Virus record (IMG/VR): IMGVR_UViG_3300042302_000394
Coordinates: 143,814 to 207,813 of that record
DNA length: 64,000 bases
Reading direction: 5' to 3' (one strand)
Shown: in pieces, positions 37,626-52,004 of the stretch
Numbering within the stretch: position 1 is the stretch's first letter
How the letters are laid out: the number at the start of each line of letters is the position of its first letter
The notes under the pieces: generated by a model
The model's input: the letters and a program-made list of their open reading frames with translations, nothing else
The model's database searches: none
Told to the model about the DNA's origin: nothing
Translations under genes and position numbers: made by a program

Positions 37626-37949
37626 TTAAATGGAGAAGCTACTGCCGCAGCCGCAAGTGGATTGAGCGTTTGGATTTTTTATTGAAAAGCTAGATCCGGA
37701 AAGATCTTCTTTGTAATCAATTTCGGCACCTTGTAGATACTGCATACTCATAGCATCTACTACGACTTTAAATTCACCAATTGGAAATTGGAAATCATCT
37801 TCGTTAAATTCTTCATCAAAGGTAAATCCGTAACTAAATCCAGAACAGCCGCCACCTTGTACAAAGGTTCTTAAGGCAAGTTTTGGATTATTTTCCTCCA
37901 TTAGGAGGTCTGTAATCTTTGTCTTAGCATTTGATGTTATGTTGATCAT
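37626..37949 (-). CDS. erpA: A-type Fe-S cluster carrier (ErpA/IscA, HesB family)
   Basis: [20 protein letters not shown]...VD..S..YL.G..IDY...[12 protein letters not shown]; start moved to ATG 37949. Confidence 0.9.
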
Positions 37950-37989
37950 ACTACTATTTACACTATAAATATCCAAGCAGGAGAAAAAC

Positions 37990-38154
37990 ATGGAACAATA
38001 CATGGATGACTTTCAAAACTACAAACGATTTACAGCTAAATGCAAATGCGGATGTCCTGCACACTGCAATCATAGTTGTACTGAATGCGAATACTGCCCG
38101 GACTGCGAATGTCCAGAGTGCATAGAATTAGATAATAGCAGAGGGTACAATTAA
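37990..38154 (+). CDS. Metallothionein-like Cys-rich peptide, 54 aa (absent from the ORF track)
   Basis: TATAAATA (37964-37971), [62 protein letters not shown]; stop overlaps the next ATG. Confidence 0.8.
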
Positions 38155-38759: not shown

Positions 38760-38767
38760 AGATTTAT

Positions 38768-39096: not shown

Positions 39097-39678
39097 TTAC
39101 TTGTAAAAAATGTGATTGCCGATTTTAGTGATACGTTCTCTCTTCCAGCCTGGATTGATATAATCACCGTGGAAGTACATGGCCTCTTTTAGGCTAGGAA
39201 GGCGAAATCCTTCTAGTAGAACTTTCTTAGCGACTTCTTCGCTTTCTTTAAAAGAAGCCTTGTTCACTGCCCTAGTTGGAACAGTCCTGTCACAGACCCA
39301 ACTAAATTGGCATAGGACCTTTTCATAGACAATGTTCTTTTGATAGATTGTCTTGCAGATATCGCTTGGATACTGCCCGCTTTCAGTTCTGTTTATTGTA
39401 ACTTGTGCAACTGCAACCTTGCCCTCAAACGGCTGATTGCCTGCTTCATAATAGATGTTCTTGGCGAGACAAGCTAATTGTCTTTCGCGAACTTCTGTTG
39501 TAATTTGGGAACTATCTGTTACTTGATAATTAGATTGCTTGTTAGCAATGGCCCATTGTAATAGAGATACAGATCCATAAGCAGCTACAATCATCAACAA
39601 TAATGTGATGATCTTCAACAAAGTCGAAGAAACTTGCACCTGTGTATCTTGATCCCTATCTAGCGTTAACTCAGTCAT
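39097..39678 (-). CDS. Cell wall hydrolase, SleB/CwlJ (Hydrolase_2) family, with N-terminal TM
   Basis: CLAKNIYYEA.NQ...GK.AVAQV..NR...CQFSW.C...YFH..YI.P.W...IGNHIFY. Confidence 0.92.
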   Translation of the reverse strand: MTELTLDRDQDTQVQVSSTLLKIITLLLMIVAAYGSVSLLQWAIANKQSNYQVTDSSQITTEVRERQLACLAKNIYYEAGNQPFEGKVAVAQVTINRTESGQYPSDICKTIYQKNIVYEKVLCQFSWVCDRTVPTRAVNKASFKESEEVAKKVLLEGFRLPSLKEAMYFHGDYINPGWKRERITKIGNHIFYK

Positions 39679-39777: not shown

Positions 39778-40329
39778 TTACTTAATGCCAATAAGCATAA
39801 ATCTTGAGAACTTCCAAGTGGGGTACTCAAAGTCTTTTTGGCCGCGGTACAGTAGGTTACTAACTGGATAAGTCCCGATGAACTCGTCTAAACTACTGCT
39901 GTGTATGTGGTGGTCTTCGTGCGGCATATTGTTGCCTTGAAGTACTACAGTGGTTCCTTTTGGGATACTGTTCCACCAATCCAAACTTTCGAAGTGTTCG
40001 GTGCTTGTATTTATAACCAAATCTGGGCCGTGCCAGTCCAGATCAAGTAGATTACAGTCCTGGGTTTTAGCTTTAAACTTCCAGTTATCTATAACCCAAT
40101 TCTCGTTGATCATGTCCGCCACAGCTTCGCATTTTGGATCAACGTCGTAACTGCGTATCTTTCCAATCTGTATATTGCCTCGACTGTTTAATAGGAACGC
40201 TGTTACTCCATACCATCCGCCGTAGATCCAAATACTATCGACAGAATCAAAAAGTTTTTCTAATTCTTCGCAGAGCCAAATCTTACTTCCTATTTGACCG
40301 CTACTAAATGCATCCTTATTCACTATCAT
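39778..40329 (-). CDS. Class I SAM-dependent methyltransferase-like protein
   Basis: SK.WL...IYGGWYG...SYDVDP...VINTSTEH. Confidence 0.7.
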   Translation of the reverse strand: MIVNKDAFSSGQIGSKIWLCEELEKLFDSVDSIWIYGGWYGVTAFLLNSRGNIQIGKIRSYDVDPKCEAVADMINENWVIDNWKFKAKTQDCNLLDLDWHGPDLVINTSTEHFESLDWWNSIPKGTTVVLQGNNMPHEDHHIHSSSLDEFIGTYPVSNLLYRGQKDFEYPTWKFSRFMLIGIK

Positions 40330-40438
40330 ACTTTAATTTCAATATTTTTTTCAAGACTAGGAACCCTAAATATAGCATCTATTTACTGAGAGATCAAATG
40401 TTGTTAATATAACAGTATTTTATTTAATAAATACCGCT

Positions 40439-42403
40439 ATGCCTGATAGATCTATACAATTACTAACTGATGTTTTTCCAAATTCAACTACAAATCATGG
40501 TAATTTGAACAATCCCGATATAATACTAGTCCAGGCACCTGGATGGGGAGTGCAAACAGCTCCGCTTTCTTTAGCATCACTTTCAGCCTATGTTCGGCAG
40601 AAAGGATACAAGATTTTACCATTAGATTTAAATGTTGAATTTTTTGCTATTAGACCTGAGAAATTTTCCATAATGTGGGACATAGATCAATCTCAGTGGT
40701 TTTGGGAATCTAAAGACTGCGTTAATGACCTGTTAACCGAATACAAAAAAGAAATTGATGACTTTGTCGAGTTAGTGGTGTCGACTAATACACCATTAGT
40801 TGGATTTAGTTTATACAACACTTCAATGCATACTTCGATGCATCTTATCAAACTGCTCAAAGCACGTAAGCCTGAGCTAAAGATTATTGTCGGTGGTCCT
40901 CATGCCCACCGATATCTAGCTGGTAATGTTTTGGCAAAAAATCCGTTAATAGATGCAGTCGCCCAGGCTGAGGGAGAAGAAACATTAGTAGACATAATTG
41001 AGCGTGTTCGAAAAAATCAATCATTGCTCGATTGCCCTGGATTGTTAGTGTTTAAAGACGGAGCAGTACATGCTACTCCAACAAGGCCAATGATTCCAAA
41101 AATCGACACTCTTCCGATACCCCACTACAGTGATTTTTCATTAGCTCCTTACCTATCCCCAACACGATTACCAATGGCGTCTAGTCGAGGGTGTCCTAAT
41201 AAATGTATATTCTGTAATGAGCAACCTTATTGGGAATCATATCGATTTCGGTCTGCAGAAAGCATGATTGAAGAAGTTAAGTACCAATTAAAATTATATC
41301 CTGAAATTGACTTTATTGACTTTCAAGATAGTTTATGTAACGGGAAGATAAGCGCAATTGAAAAGTTTGCCGAATACCTCATTGAAAATAAAATTAAAAT
41401 ACAATGGGCCGGACAGGCAGTTATTAGAAAAGAAATGACCGAAGAACTGATGATAAAATTAAAACAGTCCGGATGTGTGGTCATGGCCTACGGATTAGAA
41501 ACTCCAAACCCTACACTTATGAGGAGTGTAGGAAAGTTATTATCAAAAGGTGCCGATATTGATAAAATTGCTGAATCTCATGCAAGGACCGGACTTAATG
41601 CAGTTTACAATGTCATGTTTGGGTTACCGGGAGAAACTGAAGAAGATTCATTAATGGTCTTAGAGTTTTTAAGACGTAATTCAAAAAATAAATTATATGT
41701 AAATCCCAGTGCAGCATTTTGCGGATTTGCTAACGGAACTCCTGGATGGGAGAACGCAGAAAAATTCGGTATTGACAAAACACTCGGCGGAACTTTTTGG
41801 AAAAGTGTAGATGGTAATAACACATTCCTAGTTCGATTAAAAAGATTTGAAGATTTTTGTCGATTAGTTTCCGACTTAGGTATAAAAACCACTTATCCGT
41901 CGACATATCTTCTCAATAGAAATCAAGTCATTGCCCAATATTATATTGCAATAGGTCAACCAGAAAAAGCAATATACTATTACACAGAATGGGTTAAAGA
42001 TCATCCCGAAGATCAAATAGCTAAAAAGTTTTTATTCGAATATTCAGGTTTCTTAAAAAGTACCCCAAGTTCAAATGTTTATGCAATTAGCCGGCATTCG
42101 GATGAGAATTGGTTAAATGGTGTTGCTAGAAATTGGGGGCCTGCAATATTATTTTCACATGTTCCTTACATTTTAGAAGAATTAACAGTTGGTAAAATTG
42201 TACAGTTTTCAGATCTTCAAACAAGAAAAATAATTAGAGTTGAAGATAATTTTGAAAATGATTGTATTGTAATACACCTCGACGGCACTCATTTAGATGG
42301 AGATCAAGTTGGTTGGCCAAAACTAATAACTGTTTTAGAGGAGCCTAGCAAAGTTATCCCTATTAAGATAGTTAATTACACAGAAATAGATTTTAAAAAA
42401 TGA
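40439..42403 (+). CDS. Cobalamin-binding radical SAM enzyme (class B methyltransferase-like) with C-terminal extension
   Basis: PLSLASL...D.N, VGGPH, EGEE, SRGCPNKCIFC, YGLET, MFGLPGET. Confidence 0.9.
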   Translation: MPDRSIQLLTDVFPNSTTNHGNLNNPDIILVQAPGWGVQTAPLSLASLSAYVRQKGYKILPLDLNVEFFAIRPEKFSIMWDIDQSQWFWESKDCVNDLLTEYKKEIDDFVELVVSTNTPLVGFSLYNTSMHTSMHLIKLLKARKPELKIIVGGPHAHRYLAGNVLAKNPLIDAVAQAEGEETLVDIIERVRKNQSLLDCPGLLVFKDGAVHATPTRPMIPKIDTLPIPHYSDFSLAPYLSPTRLPMASSRGCPNKCIFCNEQPYWESYRFRSAESMIEEVKYQLKLYPEIDFIDFQDSLCNGKISAIEKFAEYLIENKIKIQWAGQAVIRKEMTEELMIKLKQSGCVVMAYGLETPNPTLMRSVGKLLSKGADIDKIAESHARTGLNAVYNVMFGLPGETEEDSLMVLEFLRRNSKNKLYVNPSAAFCGFANGTPGWENAEKFGIDKTLGGTFWKSVDGNNTFLVRLKRFEDFCRLVSDLGIKTTYPSTYLLNRNQVIAQYYIAIGQPEKAIYYYTEWVKDHPEDQIAKKFLFEYSGFLKSTPSSNVYAISRHSDENWLNGVARNWGPAILFSHVPYILEELTVGKIVQFSDLQTRKIIRVEDNFENDCIVIHLDGTHLDGDQVGWPKLITVLEEPSKVIPIKIVNYTEIDFKK

Positions 42404-43182
42404 AAAGTTTTTTAAATCAATATAATGTTATATCTGAAGATATACCAGGGTCCTTACAATTTCCCAGTGCATTAGTATGGGACTCGTTATTAGGTTATCA
42501 AACCGAAAATAAAGTTGTGCGTAATTTTTTAGAAATAGGTGTATTACATGGAAAGTCTGCAATGCTAAGTGGGCTATATGCACAGGCCAACAACACACAG
42601 CAGGTGATTGTAGATCCCGGTGAATGGATGGACACAACTTATTCAAATTTACTATCAAAGATTGAGGGATTAAATCTAAGATTAATAAATGATTATTCTA
42701 ACAGTTTGGTGCATTTTCATTATTCTATTTTTCAAGAACATTCTCGCGATTATTCATGGTTTCATATTGATGGCGATCATAGTTATGCACAATGCTATAA
42801 AGATTTAATTTTAGCTGATCATTTTTTGTCTGACTATGGAGTTGTTATTGTTGATGATTTCTTTTCAACCATGTTTCCTCAGGTTACAGCTAGCACTTTT
42901 TCATATTTAGAAAAACATCCATTAAATTTAAAAATGTTTTTAGTTGGTCAATGTAATAAAGCATATCTATGCAGACCGCCAGCATTTGATTTTTATAAAA
43001 CGTTTTGCATAGATGTATTATCTAAAGATATGAAAGACCGAAAATATCCTGTAACTATAACTAAAACAACTTATCCTCAGGATTTTGATTGTTACGGGTA
43101 TCAACCCATAGGATGGACTGATGACAGAATGGAGTTTCGTGGTCCGGACTGGGATAGAACTAATTTTATAAAATATACCTAA
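42400..43182 (+). CDS. Class I SAM methyltransferase (Methyltransf_24-like)
   Basis: LEIGVLHGKS...HIDGDHSY...D...L...GV..VDD. Confidence 0.85.
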   Translation: MKSFLNQYNVISEDIPGSLQFPSALVWDSLLGYQTENKVVRNFLEIGVLHGKSAMLSGLYAQANNTQQVIVDPGEWMDTTYSNLLSKIEGLNLRLINDYSNSLVHFHYSIFQEHSRDYSWFHIDGDHSYAQCYKDLILADHFLSDYGVVIVDDFFSTMFPQVTASTFSYLEKHPLNLKMFLVGQCNKAYLCRPPAFDFYKTFCIDVLSKDMKDRKYPVTITKTTYPQDFDCYGYQPIGWTDDRMEFRGPDWDRTNFIKYT

Positions 43183-43185
43183 CAG

Positions 43186-44421
43186 TTAATTTTTCCACCA
43201 CGGCAAATATTTTTCTGTATTGTGATTTCGATAAGCATCCATCTTTTTTATTATCGAAACACTGTTTTTAAAATTTATATCTGACTCAGGTGTTCCGATT
43301 AAAAATGTAATCATTGCACTCAATATGTTAGCCTTTTCTTTAACTGCATCTTTTTCAAGTAGTTCTCTATTGTTTTCAAACCAGGTTGCAATTTCTTGAT
43401 ACACTGTATTTTTATAAGCTGTTGGTAAATTACTCGGGGATGCATAGCTTGGATCGTAGATATAATTTATGTGAGGAAAGTTTAAAATATTCTTTCCTTC
43501 CAACCTCACAATATAATCTAACAATTCTGTAAATTTATGTGTATTAAAAATAGAAAACACAGTGTGAAACTCGATACCAATATTTTCGTTTTCATTCGAA
43601 TATTGAACTATGCTATCAATATTATCTTTAACAATGTTCCATTTTCCAGGATATCTAATATATTCGTACATATCAGCAACAGCATCAATACTTACTTTAA
43701 TAGTCATAGTCTTAAAATGGCTCCAGATGTCAAACCATTTTGACGGTGTCACAGTTAAATTTGTATGTATAGATAAGTCAACCTGTTTAGATAAACCTGA
43801 ACTAATTAGTTCTTTACAAAATGTATAAAAATCGTTGTTGATTAATGGTTCACCACCGGTTACTAATATCTGCACTAATCCGTCAGTCTTTACTAGGTCA
43901 AGGATATGTTTAATTTGATCATAGTTCCATTGAGCTTTATAATCACTTTCTTTTTCACCCCATGGTTTAATGTTGAGGAATTTAAATTCTTTTATTAGTT
44001 GATCGCTAGCTCCCGGGGTACACATCTTGCATTGTAGATTACACTTATTCGACCAACTTAAATCTAAGTAATTTACATCAACAGATTCTAACTTGCCCGT
44101 ATGCATTTCAGTGTTTGTTATAATATCTTCAATCGGCCATCTCTTTACAAACCAATTTCTAACACTTTCACCCCCATTGTCCTCAACATTATAACAATGC
44201 TGGCACTCGGCCACCCGCTCGCCGTCTATCATTTTCTTTCTTATATTTTTTAATTGATCAATATTGTAAAATTCAATCAAACTTGTTATCTCATTTATTT
44301 TTACAAACTTGCCATCTTTCTTTAATCTTCCTGCATTAGTAGAATTACAACAAAGACGCATATTGCCATCAGTGTGTGTAGAAAAATGATTCCATGCTAA
44401 CGGGCAATATGTCTTAGTCAT
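43186..44421 (-). CDS. Radical SAM protein with N-terminal SPASM/twitch-like Cys cluster
   Basis: CPLAW...CC...CQHCY; NKCNLQCKMC; TGGEP. Confidence 0.9.
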   Translation of the reverse strand: MTKTYCPLAWNHFSTHTDGNMRLCCNSTNAGRLKKDGKFVKINEITSLIEFYNIDQLKNIRKKMIDGERVAECQHCYNVEDNGGESVRNWFVKRWPIEDIITNTEMHTGKLESVDVNYLDLSWSNKCNLQCKMCTPGASDQLIKEFKFLNIKPWGEKESDYKAQWNYDQIKHILDLVKTDGLVQILVTGGEPLINNDFYTFCKELISSGLSKQVDLSIHTNLTVTPSKWFDIWSHFKTMTIKVSIDAVADMYEYIRYPGKWNIVKDNIDSIVQYSNENENIGIEFHTVFSIFNTHKFTELLDYIVRLEGKNILNFPHINYIYDPSYASPSNLPTAYKNTVYQEIATWFENNRELLEKDAVKEKANILSAMITFLIGTPESDINFKNSVSIIKKMDAYRNHNTEKYLPWWKN

Positions 44422-45763
44422 GTTTAAAAGCATCTTTCAAGTCTGGAATATAATCGCCGATTGAAATTCCTCTATGGTCATCAAGTATTTTAATTCTATG
44501 TTTGAATACCTTAAACAGTTTCGGATTGTCAGGCTTGGTTAATTCATTTAATAACAAGTGTATCTTTCCATCTAGTCCGGGAAAATCTTTAATGACTTGA
44601 CTATTTTCTAGATATGCTGTTAATCTCTGTGTAGCTAAATCTTTCAGAGACTGTGGTAACATTGATATTTGTTGTTCCATCGGAAACATAATTAAGTTGA
44701 TGTTATATGGCCACTCTTTAAAGTATGGATGCACTTTGGCCTGTTCTTCTATAAAATATAATAGGCTATCTAAGTTAACAATGTTCAATGAGCTAACGGT
44801 GATATTATTCAATATCTTAACATTGCTGTGTTTCATATAACTCTTTGCTTCAATGTAATTCTTTGATACCTGGCGCCATTTACTAGGATATCTAGCATAA
44901 TCGTTGACTTTATCAAACCCGTCAATACTGGCAATGAGTTCAAACTTTTTAAACTTAGGCATTAACTCTAAAAAGTTTTTATTTAGGTTTGTAAAGTTAC
45001 TGGACAAAAATACAGTAATATTTTTAGCATGATCATTGTCTACAACATATTGCAGTGCCTTTAACACAAATGGCATAATTGTAGGTTCACCACCGGCAAA
45101 ACTTAATACTTCTAGTCCAGGTGCTAATTTTGTAAAACTTTCCCATATTTCTTCATTATCAGACCAATCGGGATGTTCGACATCTTTCCATGTTTTATTA
45201 TGTTCAGTGATTCCAAACACACTGGAAATTTCAATAAATCTTCCATCTAATACTTTGATGCCACCAAATTTATTATTAAGTTCACCTAACTCTTTAGCAA
45301 TCTGACTACTGTCGTAACTGTTGCACATGACACATTTAAGGTTGCACAAATTACTAGGCTTTAATTCTAAATATGTTGGTTGGTGTAACACTTCGTAACT
45401 GTTGTTTATGCTGTTGGCAACTATCTCTAATGTTTTTCGATTATTTTTATAATCTTCAATTGACCGTGTACGCATACTAACGTCGCCGTCTCGAATGCAA
45501 CGCCTGCAAGCATCAGGAGTATCTCCTGTATGTAATTTTTTTCTTAAATCAACAAGGTGTTCGCTGTTCCACGCATCACTAAAATTATCCCCGGATAAAA
45601 TGCTAATGATATCTCCGTTCGGGTGTGTCATTGTTCCTACATAATTACAACACGGTTTAAGGTGGCCAGCGGGATTAGAACTTAGTTGTGTAAAAGGATA
45701 AAAACAAAATGTCTCACTTTCAATAATTTCTGTTCTTAATTGATCAATCTTGTCCATATTCAT
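44414..45763 (-). CDS. Radical SAM protein with N-terminal SPASM/twitch-like Cys cluster
   Basis: CFYPF...PCC...CRRC; NLCNLKCVMC; AGGEP. Confidence 0.9.
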   Translation of the reverse strand: MNMDKIDQLRTEIIESETFCFYPFTQLSSNPAGHLKPCCNYVGTMTHPNGDIISILSGDNFSDAWNSEHLVDLRKKLHTGDTPDACRRCIRDGDVSMRTRSIEDYKNNRKTLEIVANSINNSYEVLHQPTYLELKPSNLCNLKCVMCNSYDSSQIAKELGELNNKFGGIKVLDGRFIEISSVFGITEHNKTWKDVEHPDWSDNEEIWESFTKLAPGLEVLSFAGGEPTIMPFVLKALQYVVDNDHAKNITVFLSSNFTNLNKNFLELMPKFKKFELIASIDGFDKVNDYARYPSKWRQVSKNYIEAKSYMKHSNVKILNNITVSSLNIVNLDSLLYFIEEQAKVHPYFKEWPYNINLIMFPMEQQISMLPQSLKDLATQRLTAYLENSQVIKDFPGLDGKIHLLLNELTKPDNPKLFKVFKHRIKILDDHRGISIGDYIPDLKDAFKHD

Positions 45764-48689
45764 TATTCCTTGTTGCTTCTAACACTAATTTCATTTCTGG
45801 TATGATTTCATAAGTATTCTCACCTCTTAACTTATCCAATTGTTCCGTCACTGTTACAAATTTCTTTGCTGATGTTAAATCAAATGGTTTTTTTAATTCA
45901 TGTATGATATGTGTTAAAAGATGATCTATGCTTGTATTATATGTTTCGTTGTGCTCTTTGACAAAAGTTTCTAATTTAATTACAGTCTCTGCACGATAAT
46001 CATCGGGTAGAATACTAACATGATAATGTGAAGGATGTTCTAACAAATTGATGAAGAAATTATTGTAATTAATAAATTTGGTTTTAGGATGTTGACGTAT
46101 AACTCCTATTGAAATCAAATGTTTAATAATTTCAGGAAATCTGCCAACATTCCAAGCACCTACAGTAATACCCGGGCGTATGATAGCATTATCTAATGTC
46201 ATCAATTCTTTTAGATTTGACTCAACCTTAGACCATACAGTGCCGGCTCGAATGAGTTCTGCACGTTCTCCAACTTCATCGATACTGGGCCATATTTCTA
46301 ATTTGCCAAAGTTCCATCGCCGCCAGTAGTCAATAACATTTTTCTTATTATAAGATAACACTGATGCATTTGTGTTATATGATAGTTTAACATCAAATCG
46401 TTGTTTTTCTACCAACATTTCTAAAATTTGCCAGTGTTCAGGCATGAGTAGAGGTTCGCCTCCAGCAAAGTAAATTCTTTCCACATGGTTAATTTGATCT
46501 TTTAGAAAATCAAAGTTATTCTTATCATCTACTGATTCGATGCTCCATATTTTTTCTTGATCAGTGAGGCCTAATTTTTTAGCATCCGGCACCCATGCTG
46601 AACTGTAACGTGGTCCGCAACTACGACATTTAAAATTGCAAAGATTACTAAAACGGAAATCCCAATACTTCAACTCCATAGTAGTGCATGTTCCGTCTGC
46701 TAGTGTAATTTCTGGAATTTTTTTTACTACCTCTGGAAAGTCTCTATTGTGATAGAAACGACCACTTTCACCAGTGACCCGTTCTCTATCAAAACATTTA
46801 CGGCATATTTCGGGCTCTTTGCCCCCTATCATATCTTTTCTTAAAGATTTCATATTGCCGCTGTTCCAAATTTCTTCAATGCTCTGATGTGTTAGATCAC
46901 CAGCAAAATAATTATGTACAGAGGTTAGGCAACACGGAATTACTTTTCCACTAGGTTCAAATGCAAGATGCATCCAGGGCACTGCACATATTGTGGTTGT
47001 ATTTGTTGCAACTGCAACTACATCTTCTTTTTTGACAATTTTAATAGGTTTGTAATCGAAGGCAGTTATTTTTTTTGAGTTGAACATTGTGAGTAACCAG
47101 GACCTGTTATTTATTTGTTGTAATGTTGGTGTATTTTTATTTGCATCAAAGAACTCTTTAGCAGAATGTACAGCAGATAATGCATAATTACCGAACGGCC
47201 TATCTACTCCCAGAGTCTCCCATGCTGCCAATCTATCAATAGCTTCAGCATTATCGGGATCTTGTGCAATGGTATTGCATAACTTAATTGTTTCCCTAAA
47301 TGCACTTCGCCATGTGGCAAACTCGTCTGTGTTAAATGTTGTAATGTTACTGACTTTATCGAAGACTTTTAATTTAGGAACAATAGTCGTCAGTAGGTCT
47401 AATGTTTTCCAAACTTTGATTTTGCCAAATGCCCGCTTAGGGAATAATTTAACGCCACCGTAACCATATTCTAAATCATTAACAGGATTCTTACTGTGCC
47501 AGACGTATGTACAGTCTCTATCAAATATCTCTGGTTGGTAGTCGAACTGCCAGTCATCGACTAAGTAAGCATCACCGTCGACTACATAGAACATGTCAGT
47601 CTTGGATAACTTAGCCGCTGCCTTATGTGCCTCAAAGATACCAGTAACACCATCCACACGTTTGGCATGTGGTGCTTTTTCTAAAACACGCTGCCAATTC
47701 TCTTCTGCATTAGATTCATGGTAACTAATAAAGATTACATCCAGTGTTTCGGCAATCAGAGGAGTAACTGTTCCTATTTCTTTAACACCCACAATCTCTG
47801 CACTGGGAGTAATTTTCAAAGCCCAAATCTTCTCCCCGTTTATTTCTTTGTCTAGATACCATATATGTTCATAGGCTAGATCGTGCCAAGGAATGTCGTA
47901 ATCTAAATCAAAACGCATTTCTGGTAGGCTAGGATTTTGTTCAATTTTAAACTCAGGACTAACTGTGCCTAACCATTCCCATTTAGAAGTTTTTTTACGT
48001 TTAGGTTCAAACTTAATCAACCAAGTACCTGGTTTTGGACTGTAGTTAGGATCCAGCTCAAGTGCAGTAACGTAATCCAGAAACCAAAATGGCGGATAAC
48101 ATTCGTTGACATCGATGAGTAGTTTAGGAAGATCAGGATTCCATGTAACTCGCATTTCAGGCATAACGTATCCCATGTCTTTCTCGCCTTTAACGTTGGC
48201 GCCAGGCACCTCACAAGTAAATGCCCATATTTTATCTTCTAAAGGATTGACTCTAGGATCAATGTACCAAACTAACGTATAGTCAGCATCGTCTTGATTA
48301 TATACATAACTTTCTATAGGATTAAATTCAAATGTAATAGAACTTGCTATTGCAGAATTCTTTTTCCAGATAGGCGTTTTTGCCCACATGTGATTCTTTG
48401 GTACTTCTATTTCATGTGTTTCATATCCAGCATATGGGTGCCACCCATCTTTAAACAGTTTGGCTACCCACTCACCTTTGTATGTCCAAACTAGACATTT
48501 TCTTGTTTTAGGCACATCATTTACAAAGTTCAAGACACTAGAATGTCTTGCATAAGGATTTATCACTAAGAATTCAGTATCGCCTTCACCTAAGTTGTAT
48601 AATTGTTGGTCATAATAAAACTCATCCCCTCCCCAGGGGATTTCTTTGATTAGGTCTGTATTGATTTTGGGGTATTGATCTAGAAGCAT
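45744..48689 (-). CDS. Fusion of aromatic-rich repeats, a glycosyltransferase-like (DxD) domain and a twitch radical SAM domain
   Basis: DVIFISY.E..AEENW...AHKAAA...YVVDGD...YGYGGVKL; then CAVPW...PCC...CRKC, NLCNFKCRSC, AGGEP. Confidence 0.85.
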   Translation of the reverse strand: MLLDQYPKINTDLIKEIPWGGDEFYYDQQLYNLGEGDTEFLVINPYARHSSVLNFVNDVPKTRKCLVWTYKGEWVAKLFKDGWHPYAGYETHEIEVPKNHMWAKTPIWKKNSAIASSITFEFNPIESYVYNQDDADYTLVWYIDPRVNPLEDKIWAFTCEVPGANVKGEKDMGYVMPEMRVTWNPDLPKLLIDVNECYPPFWFLDYVTALELDPNYSPKPGTWLIKFEPKRKKTSKWEWLGTVSPEFKIEQNPSLPEMRFDLDYDIPWHDLAYEHIWYLDKEINGEKIWALKITPSAEIVGVKEIGTVTPLIAETLDVIFISYHESNAEENWQRVLEKAPHAKRVDGVTGIFEAHKAAAKLSKTDMFYVVDGDAYLVDDWQFDYQPEIFDRDCTYVWHSKNPVNDLEYGYGGVKLFPKRAFGKIKVWKTLDLLTTIVPKLKVFDKVSNITTFNTDEFATWRSAFRETIKLCNTIAQDPDNAEAIDRLAAWETLGVDRPFGNYALSAVHSAKEFFDANKNTPTLQQINNRSWLLTMFNSKKITAFDYKPIKIVKKEDVVAVATNTTTICAVPWMHLAFEPSGKVIPCCLTSVHNYFAGDLTHQSIEEIWNSGNMKSLRKDMIGGKEPEICRKCFDRERVTGESGRFYHNRDFPEVVKKIPEITLADGTCTTMELKYWDFRFSNLCNFKCRSCGPRYSSAWVPDAKKLGLTDQEKIWSIESVDDKNNFDFLKDQINHVERIYFAGGEPLLMPEHWQILEMLVEKQRFDVKLSYNTNASVLSYNKKNVIDYWRRWNFGKLEIWPSIDEVGERAELIRAGTVWSKVESNLKELMTLDNAIIRPGITVGAWNVGRFPEIIKHLISIGVIRQHPKTKFINYNNFFINLLEHPSHYHVSILPDDYRAETVIKLETFVKEHNETYNTSIDHLLTHIIHELKKPFDLTSAKKFVTVTEQLDKLRGENTYEIIPEMKLVLEATRNNEYGQD

Positions 48690-48728: not shown

Positions 48729-50258
48729 TTAGAAACTCTTAGGCAGCGACACAATGCTGGTCAGTACTGTACCCGAATTGTCAAATCCTATAAATTTACG
48801 TGTCACTGTTCCATCAAGTATAGCGCCGGAGTCTAACTGGTAATACCTAGGCGGAGTATCAACATTCGAATAATAATGGAATGCTCTAGTTAGATTTTTT
48901 AGTGTTGTATCAAAATCACTGTTAAGATCCGATATGTCCCTCAACTGATTTAATGAAACATTAACGTTTCCGTTGCCGTCGTCATTGACAATGAACATAG
49001 ATCCTACAGAAGATTCTAAACCAAAAGATGTTTCGTAGTCCAATCCTGGTGTACTCTTTACCTTATACAGTGGCAGGCCGTCACTATTTGTGGCGCTACT
49101 GAGATGCTGTACAGGTCCAGTAGACGATAACGGGAATCTATATACAGTGGCCCATCCACTATACGGATAGTCTGTAGCTGTGGCAAGATAGCCCAATGTG
49201 CTGGTTGCTGTAAAGACTTGACCACCAGCACCATATAAATCTGTGCCATCTCCACCTGTACCTACACCTATGGTAAGAACTTTAACTTGATCAATCTTGT
49301 CGTAACTCATTCCTATAACACTGTTATACGGTGCAGCAGGACTTACCCAATAACCCAAGGATTCAAATCTCGAAAGGTCAATAGCTACATTAACTATGTT
49401 AGTGACTGTGACTACAGAGTTAATTCCAACACCGCCTTCAGATGCAATAGTTACATTGTTAGTATAGGTTCCGGGTGTGTTGTTTAGCTCTAGCACACGC
49501 AATCTTACAGTAAAGGTATTGTTGGCTTTATCAACGATGCTCCATCCTGGGTTGTTGTTTCCAAACGATGTAGTAAAATCTAATAGTACATCTGGCTGAT
49601 CAATTAGATCATATACGGGCATAATTTCAAAACTTTGACGTACTTGTTCTCCTAGCTGTGTTGCCGTGGTAGTTGCAGTGATGGGACTTACACGCATACT
49701 AAAGGTACGTTCTACATTTTGAAATGTAGGTATCTTATAGTTTACAGCATCAAAATCAGAAACAATATTTAAGAAATTAGAATATTGACCTACTTCAGTT
49801 CCATAATAAGAGATAATAAAGTTTTGACTGCCGCCCGGAGGGATAACAAAGGAACTGGTAGTATGAAATATTGGAAAGACTCCGTTAGGAAAAGATCGTT
49901 TAATACCATTACCATCAGTGTCTCCTACGGTCAAAGGAGTATTTCCGTCATTATGTAGGGTAAGAGTCTGTCGTGTAGCAGTACTGTACCATTTTAACAA
50001 ATCTGCCCAGTTAGTTGGATTTTGCAAAACAAGATCTGTGGTACTGGTCGAAGCTGGTGGAAATACAAAGGTAGGAACGGGATTAGGTGTTACTCGTAAT
50101 ATCTTTGTTTGAGTAACAGCCGTAGGTGCCCTCTTAACTGGTTCCCATAGATATTTCAGTGTCTCTAATGTTGGAACTGGGCCTTTAACAGCGCCACCAG
50201 ATATTCTAAATCCGAGTGAACTGGTAATTCTTAGATTAGTATCAAAATTATTTGCCAT
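48729..50258 (-). CDS. Virion protein with Ig-like domains
   Basis: T/S/N-rich beta protein; LTLHNDGNTPLTV motif. Confidence 0.6.
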   Translation of the reverse strand: MANNFDTNLRITSSLGFRISGGAVKGPVPTLETLKYLWEPVKRAPTAVTQTKILRVTPNPVPTFVFPPASTSTTDLVLQNPTNWADLLKWYSTATRQTLTLHNDGNTPLTVGDTDGNGIKRSFPNGVFPIFHTTSSFVIPPGGSQNFIISYYGTEVGQYSNFLNIVSDFDAVNYKIPTFQNVERTFSMRVSPITATTTATQLGEQVRQSFEIMPVYDLIDQPDVLLDFTTSFGNNNPGWSIVDKANNTFTVRLRVLELNNTPGTYTNNVTIASEGGVGINSVVTVTNIVNVAIDLSRFESLGYWVSPAAPYNSVIGMSYDKIDQVKVLTIGVGTGGDGTDLYGAGGQVFTATSTLGYLATATDYPYSGWATVYRFPLSSTGPVQHLSSATNSDGLPLYKVKSTPGLDYETSFGLESSVGSMFIVNDDGNGNVNVSLNQLRDISDLNSDFDTTLKNLTRAFHYYSNVDTPPRYYQLDSGAILDGTVTRKFIGFDNSGTVLTSIVSLPKSF

Positions 50259-50261: not shown

Positions 50262-51086
50262 TTATTTGTTTTTCCTATATAAGGATATCCACGATTTTCT
50301 TGCATATCTTTTACTTACAACAGCACCAGTTACAGTCATTGCCGCTAACCAAACAACACTATTTGGTATAGATAATTTATTAAATCTGTTACCGCGTAAC
50401 ATATTTGTAGCATTAGTAAATGACCATTCTACATATTTAGATGTCCACCTTGTTCCGTTTTTAAACAATAAAGGAAGAATGATTTTTGATCCAATAACCT
50501 GATAACCGCGTCGAAATGTTTCACCTAACATTGTATCATGTAAAGCATTTTCGCACCACTTTACTAATTCCATTTTTTCAGATAAAGACCAAGTGCCAGC
50601 GGTAGTCAACGCTGTTGCTACTACGCAAGCACCGGCGCTGCCGCTGCCGCTGCCGCTGGCCGAGCAACTACTACTGTTGCTGTCAGCACAAGAAACACCA
50701 CCGCCACCACCGCCGTCACCTGTAGGTGTGTAAGGAACTTCTGGGTCTGGCTGCGATGTTCCAGAAATACGCACTGTTGTGGTCTCTGATGTAGTAGTTG
50801 AACTAGCGTCCGGGTACTGACCAGACACTGTTAAAACACTGAGATAGTCACCTGTGACCAGTGTGGCCGAAGTATGGAATGTGGTAAATTCAGAACTGTA
50901 TGTACGTGGGGGCAACACCAACGGACTAGCCAGGGTAATGGGCGTTGTGGTAATGTCACTGCCCTCTCCAAATACTGTGAGATTCGCGTGTTGCAGTATC
51001 TTAGTGTTGTCAATTGTAAAAGAGAATGTGGTAACAGTGATGGTGTTTGCACTGTTGTTGTATAGTTTAAAGTTTCCCGCTGCCAT
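50262..51086 (-). CDS. Virion protein with Gly/Ser linker and a C-terminal Cys-initiated helical domain
   Basis: GDGGGGGGVSCADSNSSSCSASGSGSGSAGACVVATAL...RRGY; basic hydrophobic end. Confidence 0.6.
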   Translation of the reverse strand: MAAGNFKLYNNSANTITVTTFSFTIDNTKILQHANLTVFGEGSDITTTPITLASPLVLPPRTYSSEFTTFHTSATLVTGDYLSVLTVSGQYPDASSTTTSETTTVRISGTSQPDPEVPYTPTGDGGGGGGVSCADSNSSSCSASGSGSGSAGACVVATALTTAGTWSLSEKMELVKWCENALHDTMLGETFRRGYQVIGSKIILPLLFKNGTRWTSKYVEWSFTNATNMLRGNRFNKLSIPNSVVWLAAMTVTGAVVSKRYARKSWISLYRKNK

Positions 51087-51101
51087 ATATGTTGTTCTCT
51101 T

Positions 51102-51929
51102 TTATAGTACGATGTTCTCAAAATGGGTCTTGGGCGTGATGATAAAGCCAGGAGCCGTGGTATCTGTATAGGTTATGGTAAATTCCACACCCTTGCCGGT
51201 GTTAACGTCCTTTTGTGCTACCATGCTGATCTGCAGGGTACCACTGGTCCAGTAGGTACTGGTAGTGGGCCAGGCTGTGTCGCGCCACTGTGTTCTGGTA
51301 TATTTCCAGTTCTGGGTATCCTGTATATAGAGTATAAATGCAGCCCACTCCTGATCTAGATCGTTGACCCCCGTGGTGTCATCGTAGAAACTGCTCCAAA
51401 CAAACTCACCCCCAGTGTTAAAGAAATAGTGACCTAGCAGGCTAGTAGTCCAACTGGCCGTGACCACATGGCTGATTTCCCCAACCCATGATGTAGTTGT
51501 ACTGGTACTAACACCCCCTCTATAAGGGCTTGTGGTCACAGCGCCTGTGCGATCTATAGTATTACCACCATCTGAGAAGTACTGGCTAGGATGGCAAGTG
51601 TACCGACGCACATCGTCCAAGAGCCAAAGAGCTCTGTAGTGTAGATCATTATGTGTGGCTGTGGAGACCAGGGTAGTGCCTGTTGTGGGGCCCACTGTTG
51701 ATGTAGTGACGTTTAGTACGTGAAGATGTATTTGATTAATGTCAGCAATCAAGTTATGCCAACCCTGGGCTGTGACCCTGTTGCGATTGGTCACGGGCAC
51801 ACTGTTCAGCCAGGTCAACCCATAGCCATCTATGCCCGTGCCCAGAATTTCTTCCACATTGTTGTAGATGGTGTTGTAGTCGTCGATCTGGATTAGAGTC
51901 AATGGACTGGAATATAGTGGATAGGTCAT
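51102..51929 (-). CDS. Virion (tail/baseplate-associated) structural protein
   Basis: I...DYN.I...V..ILGTG..GYG...W..L..DI.....H and YFFNTGG motifs; TAAATA upstream. Confidence 0.6.
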   Translation of the reverse strand: MTYPLYSSPLTLIQIDDYNTIYNNVEEILGTGIDGYGLTWLNSVPVTNRNRVTAQGWHNLIADINQIHLHVLNVTTSTVGPTTGTTLVSTATHNDLHYRALWLLDDVRRYTCHPSQYFSDGGNTIDRTGAVTTSPYRGGVSTSTTTSWVGEISHVVTASWTTSLLGHYFFNTGGEFVWSSFYDDTTGVNDLDQEWAAFILYIQDTQNWKYTRTQWRDTAWPTTSTYWTSGTLQISMVAQKDVNTGKGVEFTITYTDTTAPGFIITPKTHFENIVL

Positions 51930-52004
51930 AATGATGTTACAATAGTGTGATATTTATCCTTGATCTCGACATTGACAAATCAGCTTAGATTAAATACTAA
52001 CATT

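What the first reader, a model, noticed from the sequence alone, without database searches (positions are those of the whole stretch)
39778..48689. Radical-SAM island: three twitch-type enzymes, one B12-dependent enzyme and two methyltransferases with unknown product
Seen: four CxxxCxxC enzymes within 8.3 kb, flanked by virion and lysis genes. The B12-rSAM/methyltransferase pair (40439-43182) is on the opposite strand and visibly AT-rich, suggesting a later insertion, yet has the phage late TAAATA-5nt-ATG signature. Known: class B rSAMs methylate unactivated C or P atoms using cobalamin, and twitch enzymes include sugar dehydrogenases such as BtrN. Inference: a late-expressed pathway making unusual sugar or protein modifications, dependent on host B12 and phage ErpA.
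Basis: partly seen in the sequence, partly recalled or inferred. Interest (0 to 1): 0.65.

Follow-up and report, generated by a model that had tools for sequence, protein, structure and literature searches.

The report
Phage radical-SAM sugar-tailoring gene cassette
A large uncultured lake-water phage carries a conserved trio of unusual iron-sulfur "radical SAM" enzymes joined to a glycosyltransferase, two methyltransferases and a vitamin-B12-type methylase, most likely a kit for building an unusual sugar decoration; the enzyme family is catalogued but has never been studied.

Summary
Four CxxxCxxC enzymes lie in 40439-48689. Three are NF033640 "N_Twi_rSAM" proteins, all above the curated cut-off. 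One is a B12-binding class-B rSAM. Two methyltransferases flank them, one by Pfam and one only by fold.

New findings:
- The twitch domain sits at the N-terminus, permuted relative to BtrN. Four invariant Cys align with four Cys of BtrN's twitch domain.
- The 981-aa protein fuses two unknown N-domains, a GT-A glycosyltransferase-like domain and the rSAM.
- T3C-T2-T1 are ancient paralogues, kept as a triad in at least six phage lineages. The T2-T1 pair is also kept in Bdellovibrionota, whose genomes hold up to about 24 copies of the family.
- In relatives the triad sits beside NTP-transferase/SDR sugar-nucleotide genes, GT2 genes, carbamoyltransferases and the same TylF-like methyltransferase.

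The B12/MT pair is not a compositional outlier. An 85%-identical relative has it in the same convergent layout, so "recent insertion because AT-rich" is not supported.

Housekeeping assignments (MoaA, QueE, NrdG) are excluded by score.

Best reading (about 0.5): a late-expressed sugar or glycan tailoring cassette, possibly for virion fibres. The product and the acceptor are unknown. The family is uncharacterised, and rSAM-rich aquatic T4-like phages were already reported in 2017.

The parts
37626..38003 (-). A-type Fe-S carrier (ErpA/IscA-like, Fe-S_biosyn). One of two copies in the phage fragment. Presumed supplier of clusters to the rSAM enzymes.
   Evidence: 76% identical to the Fe-S_biosyn gene of L005. 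PF01521 match at genome 181457-181759, with a second copy at 136103-136408.
39097..39678 (-). Cell-wall hydrolase (Hydrolase_2, SleB-like). This is the lysis-gene flank.
   Evidence: Pfam PF07486, E 4.6e-23. The gene is syntenic in L103/L104.
39778..40329 (-). A183: a divergent class I SAM-dependent methyltransferase-fold protein.
   Evidence: No Pfam or PHROG hit. AF2 pLDDT 84.5; Foldseek hits TehB, BioC and NodS at E 1e-8, TM 0.66. Homologues lie next to the GT family or N_Twi arrays in L011, L051, L088 and L103.
40426..40433 (+). AATAAATA, a T4-late-promoter-like motif 5 nt upstream of the ATG of the class-B rSAM gene.
   Evidence: Sequence read. The TAAATA-N5-start spacing is enriched genome-wide, 11 of 276 ORFs.
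40439..42403 (+). Class-B (B12-binding domain) radical SAM enzyme, a putative C-methylase. CxxxCxxC at residue 252, plus a C-terminal extension of about 200 aa.
   Evidence: PF02310 54 bits and PF04055 49.5 bits. Best NCBIfam hits (ApyD, rSAM_ocin_1, HpnJ, PhpK) are all far below their cut-offs. PDB: TokK and CysS. Orthologues of 83%, 66% and 48% identity in other phage contigs.
42400..43182 (+). MT260: Methyltransf_24 (TylF-clan) SAM methyltransferase. Its start overlaps the stop of the class-B rSAM gene by 4 nt.
   Evidence: PF13578 46.8 bits against a cut-off of 26.3. Some homologues also carry PF05711 TylF. A 50% orthologue lies directly downstream of the T1 orthologue in L179, and an 86% orthologue is paired with the B12 rSAM in L180.
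43186..44433 (-). T1: N_Twi_rSAM paralogue (415 aa). Twitch Cys at 10, 28, 29, 77 and 80; CxxxCxxC at 131.
   Evidence: NF033640 324 bits against a cut-off of 170. It has its own orthogroup in the tree, support 1.0. Its start overlaps T2 by 20 nt.
44414..45763 (-). T2: N_Twi_rSAM paralogue (449 aa). CxxxCxxC at 140.
   Evidence: NF033640 306 bits. Orthologues of 52-63% identity in L005, L009, L011, L102 and L179, and 85% in L180. The T2-to-T1 pair is conserved in Bdellovibrionota loci.
45744..47009 (-). T3C: the N_Twi_rSAM domain of the 981-aa fusion protein (residues 561-981). CxxxCxxC at 684.
   Evidence: NF033640 353 bits over residues 565-967. It is 65-70% identical to stand-alone orthologues in L005, L009, L102 and L179, and 85% to the one in L180.
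47010..47759 (-). GT-A (nucleotide-diphospho-sugar transferase) fold domain of the fusion protein (residues 311-560), with an invariant DGD at 371-373.
   Evidence: No Pfam hit. The family holds 2637 metagenomic proteins. AF2 pLDDT 89.3. Foldseek hits SunS/ThuS, ppGalNAc-T2, PBCV-1 A64R and TarP. VIA-align Z 10-11 to B4GALNT1, ThuS, WrtF, SpsA and Mimivirus R699.
47760..48689 (-). Two copies of an unknown N-domain of about 150 aa (fusion protein residues about 14-179 and 222-310). The same domain precedes the GT domain in stand-alone 390-400-aa homologues.
   Evidence: BLASTP against P0127. No Pfam hit.
48729..50258 (-). X509: a Cys-free 509-aa protein directly upstream of the fusion gene. Probably a virion or fibre protein and a candidate acceptor.
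   Evidence: Residues 1-334 are 30% identical to the N-terminus of the 787-aa Laminin_G_3 protein at the same syntenic position in L102. There is only a weak lead to HYDIN/ASH Ig-like domains, score 0.80. No Pfam or PHROG hit.
50262..51929 (-). Two co-directional unknown genes (274 and 275 aa) that open the same gene string. The 275-aa gene has a syntenic homologue in L102.
   Evidence: Gaps of only 3 and 15 nt separate them from the next gene downstream. 38% identity to L102:3899-4708. No family hit.
51951..51957 (-). ATAAATA late-promoter-like motif 21 nt upstream of the first gene of the minus-strand string (51929 down to 43186).
   Evidence: The same motif precedes the fibre genes at 28931 and 22561.

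Best explanation
The island is a late-transcribed carbohydrate (nucleotide-sugar or glycan) tailoring cassette of a large uncultured freshwater tailed phage.

Conserved core. The core is a translationally coupled triad of paralogous radical-SAM enzymes of the uncharacterised NF033640 family, in the order T3C, T2, T1. In this family a BtrN-type twitch domain carrying an auxiliary [4Fe-4S] cluster has moved to the N-terminus. In this phage the first member of the triad is fused to a GT-A glycosyltransferase-like domain. A TylF-clan methyltransferase, a cobalamin-type (class B) rSAM and a second divergent class I methyltransferase complete the set.

Proposed working (inferred, not shown):
1. A hexose is supplied as an NDP-sugar, or is attached by the GT-A domain to an acceptor.
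2. Each twitch enzyme cleaves SAM to the 5'-deoxyadenosyl radical and abstracts one particular sugar C-H.
3. The fully Cys-ligated auxiliary cluster takes the electron, as in BtrN. This gives a keto-sugar, or an epimer if an H atom is returned (perhaps from the extra invariant Cys of the PCC motif), or a dehydrated sugar.
4. The two SAM methyltransferases O- or N-methylate the product, and the class-B enzyme methylates an unactivated carbon.
5. The phage's two A-type carriers help load the many Fe-S clusters.

The most likely acceptor is a virion fibre protein, such as the co-directional 509-aa protein just upstream. The acceptor is the least secure part of the model.
For: Shown here:
1. Family and cofactor motifs.
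2. Against the PDB, the N-terminal 80 residues match only BtrN's twitch domain (E 2e-4). BtrN C169, C187, C232 and C235 align with the invariant C10, C28, C77 and C80.
3. T3 residues 311-560 model as a GT-A fold with an invariant DGD.
4. In L102 the same GT is a separate gene overlapping the T3C orthologue, followed by four N_Twi genes and two carbamoyltransferase genes.
5. In L103/L104 the GT sits beside a UDP-glucose/GDP-mannose dehydrogenase and a nucleotidyltransferase/cupin gene.
6. In L179 the triad is followed by the MT260 orthologue, with an SDR (Epimerase/RmlD-like) gene and a sugar-1-P NTP_transferase gene next to it.
7. The fourth N_Twi gene of this phage lies next to a Glyco_transf_34 gene and a Methyltransf_11 gene.
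8. In 80 bacterial loci the commonest non-rSAM neighbours are GT2 (22 genes in 11 loci), NodU/CmcH-type carbamoyltransferases (11 loci), class-B rSAMs (9 loci) and A183-like methyltransferases (6 loci).
9. T1, T2 and T3C are separate, well-supported orthogroups, each with bacterial sister clades. This points to distinct, non-redundant steps.
10. The 20-nt and 4-nt gene overlaps and the late-type motifs upstream of both units fit late co-expression.
11. The same window encodes a 1122-aa GT1+GT2+FkbM-methyltransferase fusion among collagen-like, Ig-like and Laminin_G_3 fibre genes, so the phage invests in glycans near its fibres.
12. The assembly is reproducible: 11.3 kb is 100% identical in four other UViGs.
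Against: - No substrate, product or acceptor is shown. No member of NF033640 has been characterised, and I found no paper on it.
- The rSAM core's best PDB match is a RiPP cyclopropyl synthase (8vpo, E 1e-12). It ranks ahead of the sugar-nucleoside enzyme BlsE and of viperin, so core similarity does not point specifically to sugars.
- The GT-A fold is shared with nucleotidyltransferases (IspD, MobA) at similar Z scores. The best Foldseek hits, SunS and ThuS, glycosylate peptides.
- The GT fusion is lineage-specific. The 85%-identical relative L180 has a stand-alone T3C, and L179 has a different upstream gene.
- This phage fragment shows no NTP_transferase and only one SDR epimerase gene, about 150 kb away. 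The record is an incomplete genome, estimated at 58% complete.
- No RNA data exist for timing.
- Several bacterial neighbours are plain housekeeping genes.
Confidence: 0.5

Rival explanations
1. Same chemistry, different target. The cassette edits host envelope glycans (LPS, capsule or S-layer glycan) or a soluble sugar metabolite during infection, for example for superinfection exclusion or receptor masking, rather than decorating virions.
For: The bacterial homologues lie in chromosomal GT2-rich loci typical of surface polysaccharide synthesis. Relatives carry sugar-nucleotide genes. Nothing here ties the product to a virion protein.
Against: A late-type motif and co-direction with a fibre-like gene (X509, syntenic with a Laminin_G_3 protein) point to virion assembly time. 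No flippase, polymerase or polyprenyl-phosphate transferase gene was seen in the island.
Confidence: 0.17
2. Protein or peptide (RiPP-like) radical modification without sugar chemistry. The three twitch enzymes and the class-B methylase would cross-link, epimerise or methylate side chains of a virion or other phage protein, and the GT domain would only add a glycan to the same protein.
For: The best PDB match of the core is a RiPP rSAM-SPASM enzyme (8vpo). SkfB also scores. The best NCBIfam hits of the class-B enzyme are the RiPP C-methyltransferases ApyD and rSAM_ocin_1. The GT's best Foldseek hits are the peptide S-glycosyltransferases SunS and ThuS.
Against: No RRE domain was detected by Pfam or NCBIfam. 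There is no credible small precursor ORF, because the intergenic gaps are at most 109 nt. All RiPP family scores are far below their cut-offs. The recurrent neighbours are sugar enzymes, not peptidases or transporters. The twitch domain resembles only BtrN.
Confidence: 0.15
3. DNA hypermodification. The GT and tailoring enzymes would build a modified sugar on phage DNA bases to evade restriction.
For: Phage glycosyltransferases often glycosylate DNA, and rSAM enzymes occur in thymidine hypermodification pathways (papers listed).
Against: No ThyA/dCMP-hydroxymethylase family gene is present in the 207.8-kb fragment, though the genome is incomplete. The island sits among late, virion and lysis genes, not replication genes. 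The homologous arrays in Bdellovibrionota chromosomes lie next to GT2 and carbamoyltransferase genes, which fits polysaccharide rather than DNA.
Confidence: 0.07
4. Housekeeping cofactor or nucleotide enzymes (MoaA, QueE, NrdG, PFL-activase), as automatic annotations of homologues suggest.
For: JGI names for homologues include MoaA, AslB and PFL-activating enzyme. A KVP40-group homologue is annotated queE in one record.
Against: Scores for these families are 15-44 bits against cut-offs of 131-284, while NF033640 is met at 306-353 bits. None of the 14 model genomes has a member above the cut-off. The gene is multiplied up to about 24-fold per genome, which is unlike a housekeeping enzyme.
Confidence: 0.02

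Closest known systems
NCBIfam NF033640 'twitch domain-containing radical SAM protein' (N_Twi_rSAM)
   Same: T1, T2 and T3C, and a fourth gene elsewhere in the genome, score above the curated cut-off over the whole model.
   Different: The family is only a named sequence model. I found no characterised member and no paper on it. The phage triad, the GT fusion and the gene contexts are not part of that definition.
BtrN (butirosin 2-deoxy-scyllo-inosamine dehydrogenase), the founding twitch-domain rSAM
   Same: It is the only PDB protein whose twitch domain matches the N-terminal domain (E 2e-4). Four BtrN Cys (C169, C187, C232, C235) align with invariant Cys. That these four are BtrN's auxiliary-cluster ligands is from memory of the BtrN structure paper. 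A carbohydrate-type substrate is plausible.
   Different: In BtrN the twitch domain is C-terminal; here it precedes the core. The cores are not specifically similar. The proteins here are 150-200 residues longer, with a helical C-terminal region and an extra invariant Cys in the PCC motif.
Class-B cobalamin-dependent rSAM methylases (TokK, CysS, GenK-type, PhpK, ApyD)
   Same: The domain order is a B12-binding domain followed by the rSAM core with CxxxCxxC. The best solved relatives are TokK and CysS.
   Different: The protein falls far below the cut-off of every curated subfamily. It has a C-terminal extension of about 200 aa. Its substrate is unknown.
Virus-encoded virion glycosylation machineries: chlorovirus PBCV-1 A064R (GT+GT+methyltransferase) and mycobacteriophage capsid/tail glycosylation
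   Same: A viral GT-A domain is combined with methyltransferases in late gene regions. The A64R domain appears among the structural matches. Mycobacteriophage virion glycosylation is cited in PMC12619734. The domain functions of A064R are from memory.
   Different: As far as I know, none of those systems uses radical SAM enzymes. Glycosylated virions are not demonstrated here.
T4-like marine environmental viral genomes rich in rSAM genes plus an A-type Fe-S carrier (Nishimura et al. 2017, PMC5332604)
   Same: The same phenomenon was reported there: a T4-like genome with an ATC gene and 12 rSAM genes. This phage fragment has 7 rSAM genes and 2 ATC genes.
   Different: That paper counted the genes as Fe-S-related auxiliary genes. 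It did not resolve the family, the conserved triad, the sugar-gene context or the Bdellovibrionota link. The present phage comes from lakes.
rSAM-SPASM RiPP maturases (e.g. cyclopropyl synthase 8vpo, SkfB)
   Same: These give the best core-domain sequence matches in the PDB.
   Different: No RRE, no precursor peptide and no C-terminal SPASM domain are present here. The neighbourhood consists of sugar enzymes.

Membership tests
NF033640 N_Twi_rSAM | Whole-protein HMM score above the curated cut-off (170 bits) | tested here: met
   324, 306 and 353 bits for T1, T2 and T3C; 180 bits for the fourth copy.
NF033640 N_Twi_rSAM | Twitch-type Cys set located N-terminal to the CxxxCxxC core | tested here: met
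   C10, C28, C29, C77 and C80 are invariant in 17 sequences. They align to BtrN C169, C187, C232 and C235.
Radical SAM superfamily | CxxxCxxC cluster motif and GGE SAM-binding motif | tested here: met
   Motifs listed. The GGEP motif is invariant. PF04055 is above its cut-off in all four proteins.
Radical SAM superfamily | Reductive SAM cleavage and Fe-S cluster content | not testable with these tools
   This needs purified protein.
BtrN-like twitch dehydrogenases | Twitch domain C-terminal to a shortened core, with overall sequence kinship | tested here: not met
   The domain is N-terminal. Only the twitch part matches BtrN; the cores match other enzymes better.
Class-B (cobalamin) rSAM methylases | N-terminal B12-binding domain plus rSAM core | tested here: met
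   PF02310 54.1 bits (cut-off 32.1) at residues 101-186; PF04055 at 248-411.
Class-B (cobalamin) rSAM methylases | Membership of a characterised subfamily (ApyD, PhpK, HpnJ, BchE, KedN5 and others) | tested here: not met
   Best score is 114 bits against cut-offs of 280-750.
GT-A glycosyltransferases | Nucleotide-diphospho-sugar transferase fold with a DxD motif | tested here: met
   Model pLDDT 89. Z 10-11 over about 135 residues at rmsd about 3 A. DGD is invariant in 22 sequences. IspD/MobA nucleotidyltransferases score similarly, so the fold alone does not prove transferase activity.
GT-A glycosyltransferases | Match to a curated GT sequence family | tested here: not met
   No Pfam hit even at E 5.
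Class I SAM methyltransferases (A183) | Rossmann-like methyltransferase fold with a Gly-rich motif I and an acidic residue after strand 2 | tested here: met
   Foldseek: the 500 matches counted all have E <= 0.001 and the listed ones are essentially all SAM methyltransferases, best TM 0.66. The GGWYG motif is present and D64 is invariant. There is no sequence-family hit.
Methyltransf_24 / TylF clan (MT260) | Pfam PF13578 above the gathering score | tested here: met
   46.8 bits against 26.3. PF05711 TylF is seen only in some homologues, not in MT260 itself.
Housekeeping rSAMs (MoaA, QueE, NrdG) | Score above the equivalog cut-off | tested here: not met
   MoaA 44 against 284; QueE 22-24 against 200-260; NrdG 15 against 131.
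RiPP rSAM maturase systems | RRE domain and an adjacent precursor peptide gene | tested here: not met
   No RRE family hit. Intergenic gaps are at most 109 nt, and the only small ORF there (40308-40412) is a 34-aa ORF in AT-rich intergenic sequence, not a credible precursor gene. This is a limited test, because a precursor could lie elsewhere.

The most novel reading that the evidence does not exclude
The permuted-twitch rSAM triad (T3C-T2-T1) could be a new kind of radical glycan-editing machinery. Three non-redundant radical enzymes would rewrite C-H positions of a sugar, before or after transfer by the fused GT-A domain. Together with a class-B C-methylase and O-methyltransferases they would create a sugar not yet known in biology on phage virion fibres. 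The same toolkit would be expanded to about 10-24 paralogues per genome in predatory Bdellovibrionota for their own surface glycans.
Probability: 0.25. Interest if true: 0.8.

Novelty: new variant of a known kind. Interest (0 to 1): 0.58.

Why it matters
Radical SAM enzymes that act on sugars (BtrN, DesII, AprD4, GenK; listed from memory) are few, and each has revealed new chemistry. Here a whole catalogued but unstudied family turns out to be organised in several ways:
- as conserved multi-enzyme sets;
- fused or adjacent to glycosyltransferases and sugar-nucleotide genes;
- carried by abundant lake and marine phages;
- massively multiplied in predatory bacteria.

This gives enzymologists a defined three-gene core with natural partner genes to express. 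It gives phage biologists a concrete hypothesis for why aquatic T4-like phages carry many rSAM genes and their own Fe-S carriers, a point left open in 2017. If virions are the target, it would be the first radical-enzyme-built virion glycan that I know of.

Tried and rejected
- Megablast of the island against 50,697 phage records: no match.
- Pfam at E 5 and PHROGs on T3 residues 1-560, A183, X509 and the 274- and 275-aa ORFs: nothing usable.
- Profile of the A183 family against PDB sequences: only chance-level thioredoxin hits at E 0.07 or weaker, discarded. phmmer of MT260 against the PDB: nothing.
- ESM Atlas for X509: scores of 0.80 or lower to HYDIN/ASH Ig-like clusters. I kept this as a weak lead only.
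- Complex prediction on T2+T1, because the pair is conserved and translationally coupled: no verdict, so it counts neither for nor against binding.
- Literature searches for an N-terminal twitch family, for rSAM in Bdellovibrio, and for rSAM sugar or polysaccharide epimerases with a twitch domain: no relevant paper.
- Searches of the 207.8-kb record found no PEP mutase, ThyA family, CobS_N, carbamoyltransferase, NTP_transferase or psbA/psbD gene. The record is estimated at 58% complete, so these are not absences.
- Sigma-70 promoter and terminator scans of the island were not above the shuffle expectation and were not used.
- Rfam: no riboswitch or other RNA in the island.
- Composition as evidence for insertion was rejected: GC and GC3 z-scores range from -0.5 to -1.5.
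- Read laying was not run, because all 24 holders are DNA contigs with no RNA.

Full report
WHERE THE WINDOW LIES. The window is the last 64 kb of a 207,813-base IMG/VR virus record that CheckV rates 58% complete. An identical copy of one island protein occurs on contigs of up to 376 kb. The island sequence is held completely by at least 24 lake-water or freshwater metagenome runs from 2020-2024. All of these are DNA runs and none is RNA. An 11.3-kb stretch covering the island is 100% identical in four other IMG/VR contigs and 99.9% identical in a fifth, so the gene structures, including the 981-aa fusion, are not assembly accidents. Virion proteins are most similar to those of T4-like cyanomyoviruses, at about 46% identity. 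No cultured phage matches the island at the DNA level. I therefore treat it as a large uncultured freshwater tailed phage of unknown host.

CHECK OF THE OBSERVATION.
- The 654-aa protein (40439-42403, plus strand) has a B12-binding domain and a radical SAM core.
- Its stop overlaps the start of a 260-aa Methyltransf_24 protein (42400-43182).
- Three minus-strand ORFs of 415, 449 and 981 aa (T1, T2, T3) each carry CxxxCxxC. Each scores 306-353 bits on NCBIfam NF033640 "twitch domain-containing radical SAM protein", whose cut-off is 170.
- T3 and T2 overlap by 20 nt, as do T2 and T1.
- The 183-aa ORF (39778-40329) has no sequence-family hit. Its AF2 model (pLDDT 84.5) is a class I SAM-methyltransferase fold, so "two methyltransferases" holds.
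- TAAATA-5 nt-ATG is present upstream of the B12 gene. TAAATA at exactly 5 nt from a start codon occurs at 11 of 276 ORFs in the genome, against 1-4 at other spacings.
- An ATAAATA motif also lies 21 nt upstream of the first gene of the minus-strand string 51929 down to 43186, and upstream of several fibre genes.
- The flanks are a Hydrolase_2 lysin, an ErpA-like Fe-S carrier and a DNA ligase on one side. On the other side is a 509-aa protein (X509) that is syntenic with a Laminin_G_3 protein of a relative.

WHAT THE TWITCH ENZYMES ARE. In all three, the SPASM/twitch match lies N-terminal to the core. An alignment of 17 family members has these invariant positions, in T1 numbering:
- C10, C28, C29, C77 and C80 in the N-terminal domain;
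- the CxxxCxxC motif and GGEP in the core;
- R65, R92, N129, N225, S248, D250, R260 and D399.

A profile of the N-terminal domain finds only BtrN among all PDB sequences (E 2e-4). BtrN's C169, C187, C232 and C235 fall on C10, C28, C77 and C80. I recall these as the four ligands of BtrN's auxiliary cluster; the alignment itself is the result obtained here. The whole-protein profile matches a RiPP cyclopropyl synthase best (8vpo), then BlsE, viperin, SkfB, Tes and MoaA, so the core alone does not reveal the substrate. Housekeeping families are excluded by score. The family is therefore a circularly permuted twitch rSAM, probably with one fully ligated auxiliary [4Fe-4S] cluster. It is catalogued but uncharacterised, and no paper was found.

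THE 981-AA PROTEIN IS A FUSION.
- Residues 311-560 belong to a family of 2637 metagenomic "hypothetical" proteins with no Pfam domain.
- The AF2 model (pLDDT 89) is a GT-A / nucleotide-diphospho-sugar transferase fold with an invariant DGD.
- Foldseek's best matches are the peptide S-glycosyltransferases SunS and ThuS, ppGalNAc-T2, the PBCV-1 capsid glycosyltransferase A64R, and TarP/TarS.
- VIA-align gives Z 10-11 to B4GALNT1, ThuS, WrtF, SpsA, STIV A197, Mimivirus R699 and the collagen glycosyltransferase domain of LH3. It also matches IspD/MobA nucleotidyltransferases, which share the fold.
- Residues 1-310 are two copies of an unknown domain of about 150 aa, which also precedes the GT domain in stand-alone 390-400-aa homologues.
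- In L102 the GT is a separate gene overlapping the T3C orthologue. In the 85%-identical relative L180, T3C stands alone. The fusion is therefore lineage-specific, but it reflects a recurrent adjacency.

THE TRIAD IS CONSERVED AND ANCIENT. T1, T2 and T3C are only 21-26% identical to one another, yet each has its own orthologue in the related phage contigs L005, L009, L102, L179 and L180 (L011 has T1 and T2 only). T1 orthologues are 37-87% identical, T2 orthologues 52-85% and T3C orthologues 65-85%. In a tree of 238 family members the three form separate phage clades (support 1.0, 1.0 and 0.998), each nested with different bacterial sequences. A T2-type gene followed directly by a T1-type gene is also found in four Bdellovibrionota loci, and in reversed order in a fifth. 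Distinct, co-inherited paralogues argue for successive, non-redundant steps on one substrate.

DISTRIBUTION. Other phage contigs carry up to five N_Twi genes plus four further rSAM genes in 14 kb. Among one genome per prokaryotic species, most of the 80 best loci came from Bdellovibrionota MAGs. In those loci 206 of 916 ORFs are N_Twi genes, with up to nine per 17 kb. Single genomes hold 14-24 matches. In a sample of 121 genomes from the same phylum as locus L023's genome (handle G002), 26 are positive. None of the 14 model genomes is positive.

GENE CONTEXT POINTS TO SUGARS.
- In the 80 bacterial loci the commonest non-rSAM neighbours are GT2 glycosyltransferases (22 genes in 11 loci), NodU/CmcH-type carbamoyltransferases (11 loci), class-B rSAMs homologous to the one here (9 loci) and A183-like methyltransferases (6 loci). 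One locus has a weak LA_3751-type glycosyltransferase match.
- In phage L102 the triad is followed by carbamoyltransferase genes.
- In L179 it is followed by the MT260 orthologue, and next to that lie an SDR (Epimerase/RmlD/GDP-Man-dehydratase-like) gene and a sugar-1-phosphate NTP_transferase gene.
- In L103/L104 the same syntenic slot (lysin, Fe-S carriers, NifU, ligase) holds the GT together with a UDP-glucose/GDP-mannose dehydrogenase and a nucleotidyltransferase/cupin protein, and has no N_Twi genes.
- The fourth N_Twi gene of this phage sits beside a Glyco_transf_34 gene and a Methyltransf_11 gene.
- The window also encodes a 1122-aa GT1+GT2+FkbM-methyltransferase fusion among fibre genes: 6x Laminin_G_3, collagen repeats and 11x He_PIG.
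- Some MT260 homologues carry the TylF (macrocin O-methyltransferase) domain.

THE B12/MT PAIR.
- The class-B enzyme's best solved relatives are TokK and CysS. All curated subfamilies are missed by a wide margin.
- Gene GC is 0.36 for the B12 gene and 0.32 for MT260, against 0.32, 0.34 and 0.37 for T1, T2 and T3. Genes of at least 150 aa in this genome average 0.40 +/- 0.055. The z-scores of -0.6 to -1.5 are not outliers, and many genes elsewhere are more AT-rich.
- The same convergent arrangement (B12-MT on one strand, T1-T2-T3C on the other) occurs in L180/L181 at 83-87% protein identity.
- A 48% orthologue directly follows an N_Twi gene in L107. A 66% orthologue sits alone, on the opposite strand to its neighbours, beside a fibre gene and an Fe-S carrier in L105.
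- Of 74 viral loci chosen only for carrying a class-B relative, 27 have N_Twi genes within 8 kb.
- The pair is thus an accessory but recurrent partner of the triad. It is absent from L005, L009 and L102, and L179 has the methyltransferase without the B12 enzyme. Composition gives no sign of recent insertion.

MECHANISM PROPOSED. Shown here: the domain content, the cofactor motifs, the conservation, the gene coupling and the context. Inferred:
1. A hexose is provided as an NDP-sugar or attached by the GT-A domain.
2. Each twitch enzyme abstracts a specific sugar hydrogen with the 5'-deoxyadenosyl radical.
3. The auxiliary cluster accepts the electron, as in BtrN. This yields a keto-sugar, or an epimer if an H atom is returned, or a dehydration product. 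The extra invariant Cys of the PCC motif is a candidate H donor, by analogy (from memory) with the Cys donors of rSAM epimerases such as NeoN and HygY.
4. The TylF-clan enzyme and A183 methylate O or N, and the class-B enzyme methylates an unactivated carbon.
5. The two phage A-type carriers help mature the clusters: at least ten Fe-S clusters across the seven rSAM proteins of this fragment, counting one in each class-B enzyme and two in each twitch enzyme.

The acceptor is unknown. A virion fibre protein such as X509 is favoured by co-direction, the late-type motif and synteny. A host envelope glycan is the main alternative.

RIVALS.
- A purely peptide or protein chemistry is kept at about 0.15. 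The core's best PDB match and the class-B enzyme's best family hits are RiPP enzymes. However, no RRE and no precursor gene is present, and the neighbours are sugar enzymes.
- DNA hypermodification is kept at about 0.07. No ThyA-family gene was found in the fragment, the island sits in a late-gene context, and the bacterial arrays lie in polysaccharide-like loci.
- Housekeeping roles are rejected.

NOVELTY. Nishimura et al. 2017 (PMC5332604) already reported T4-like marine viral genomes with an A-type carrier and up to 12 rSAM genes, without resolving them. NCBI already has a model for the family. The following appear new, within the limits of the literature I could search:
- the recognition that the enzymes are permuted BtrN-type twitch proteins;
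- the conserved T3C-T2-T1 triad with its TylF-like methyltransferase, class-B rSAM and GT partners;
- the sugar-nucleotide context;
- the expansion in Bdellovibrionota.

I rate it a new variant of a known kind (radical SAM sugar tailoring), interest 0.58.

LIMITS. Everything functional is inference from sequence, predicted folds and neighbourhoods. The genome is incomplete. No expression data exist. The complex-prediction job on T2+T1 returned no verdict. Statements about BtrN's ligands, rSAM epimerases and A064R rest on my memory of the literature, not on tool results.

Noticed in passing
window 5612-8980 (-): A 1122-aa protein fuses a GT1 (GT-B) domain, a GT2 (GT-A) domain and an FkbM-family methyltransferase. 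It lies among fibre genes. Its layout recalls multi-domain viral glycan synthases such as chlorovirus A064R (comparison from memory).
   Followed up: partly
window 9578-14158, 18007-19986, 20318-22561, 22594-27216 (all -): Very large fibre-like proteins: 1526 aa with six Laminin_G_3 domains; 659 aa collagen-like; 747 aa with an N-terminal Mtd_N (major tropism determinant) domain; 1540 aa with eleven He_PIG Ig domains plus collagen repeats. The Mtd_N hit raises the question of a diversity-generating retroelement target, which I did not examine.
   Followed up: no
whole genome; e.g. window 28937-28943, 38765-38771, 40427-40433: TAAATA lies exactly 5 nt upstream of the start codon at 11 of 276 ORFs. 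If this is the late promoter -10 element, these late mRNAs would be nearly leaderless.
   Followed up: partly
window 54600-55900 (+): A series of small plus-strand ORFs are each preceded by near-consensus sigma-70 elements (TTGACT-17-TATAAT, or a repeated AACCGTGTTATAAT). This looks like an early-gene block with a reiterated promoter.
   Followed up: no
G000:C1:63000-98000 (outside the window): A second AT-rich region holds two more class-B-like rSAM genes (74239-75771 and 86457-87959), a QueC/PP-loop-like gene and a TctC-family solute receptor homologue. It also holds a fourth N_Twi_rSAM gene (95007-96089) next to Glyco_transf_34 and Methyltransf_11 genes. The fragment has 7 rSAM genes and 2 A-type Fe-S carrier genes in all.
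   Followed up: partly
loci L016-L095; genomes G001-G003: N_Twi_rSAM genes are hugely multiplied in Bdellovibrionota MAGs (14-24 matches per genome, arrays of up to 9). They also occur in a 1.2-Mb marine gammaproteobacterial MAG. Whether this hints at the phage's host range or only at gene exchange is open.
   Followed up: partly
L017, L021, L026, L040 (and L018 reversed): A T2-type gene is followed directly by a T1-type gene in bacteria as well as in phages, usually with overlapping stop and start codons. This could mean a two-subunit enzyme. The complex prediction gave no verdict.
   Followed up: partly
L180:376-2994 against window 40439-42403: The 83%-identical orthologue of the class-B rSAM in a related phage carries an extra N-terminal domain of about 217 aa that is absent here.
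   Followed up: no
window 43183-43185: The convergent genes MT260 (+) and T1 (-) end only 3 nt apart, with no terminator-like structure. Transcripts from the two units would therefore run into each other as antisense.
   Followed up: no
window 63330-63404 (+): A single tRNA-Arg(TCT) gene is the only RNA family match in the window.
   Followed up: yes
L103/L104: Related phages carry NifU-like, two Fe-S_biosyn and APS-kinase genes in the same syntenic slot. This is a small Fe-S/sulfur auxiliary block next to the glycan genes.
   Followed up: no
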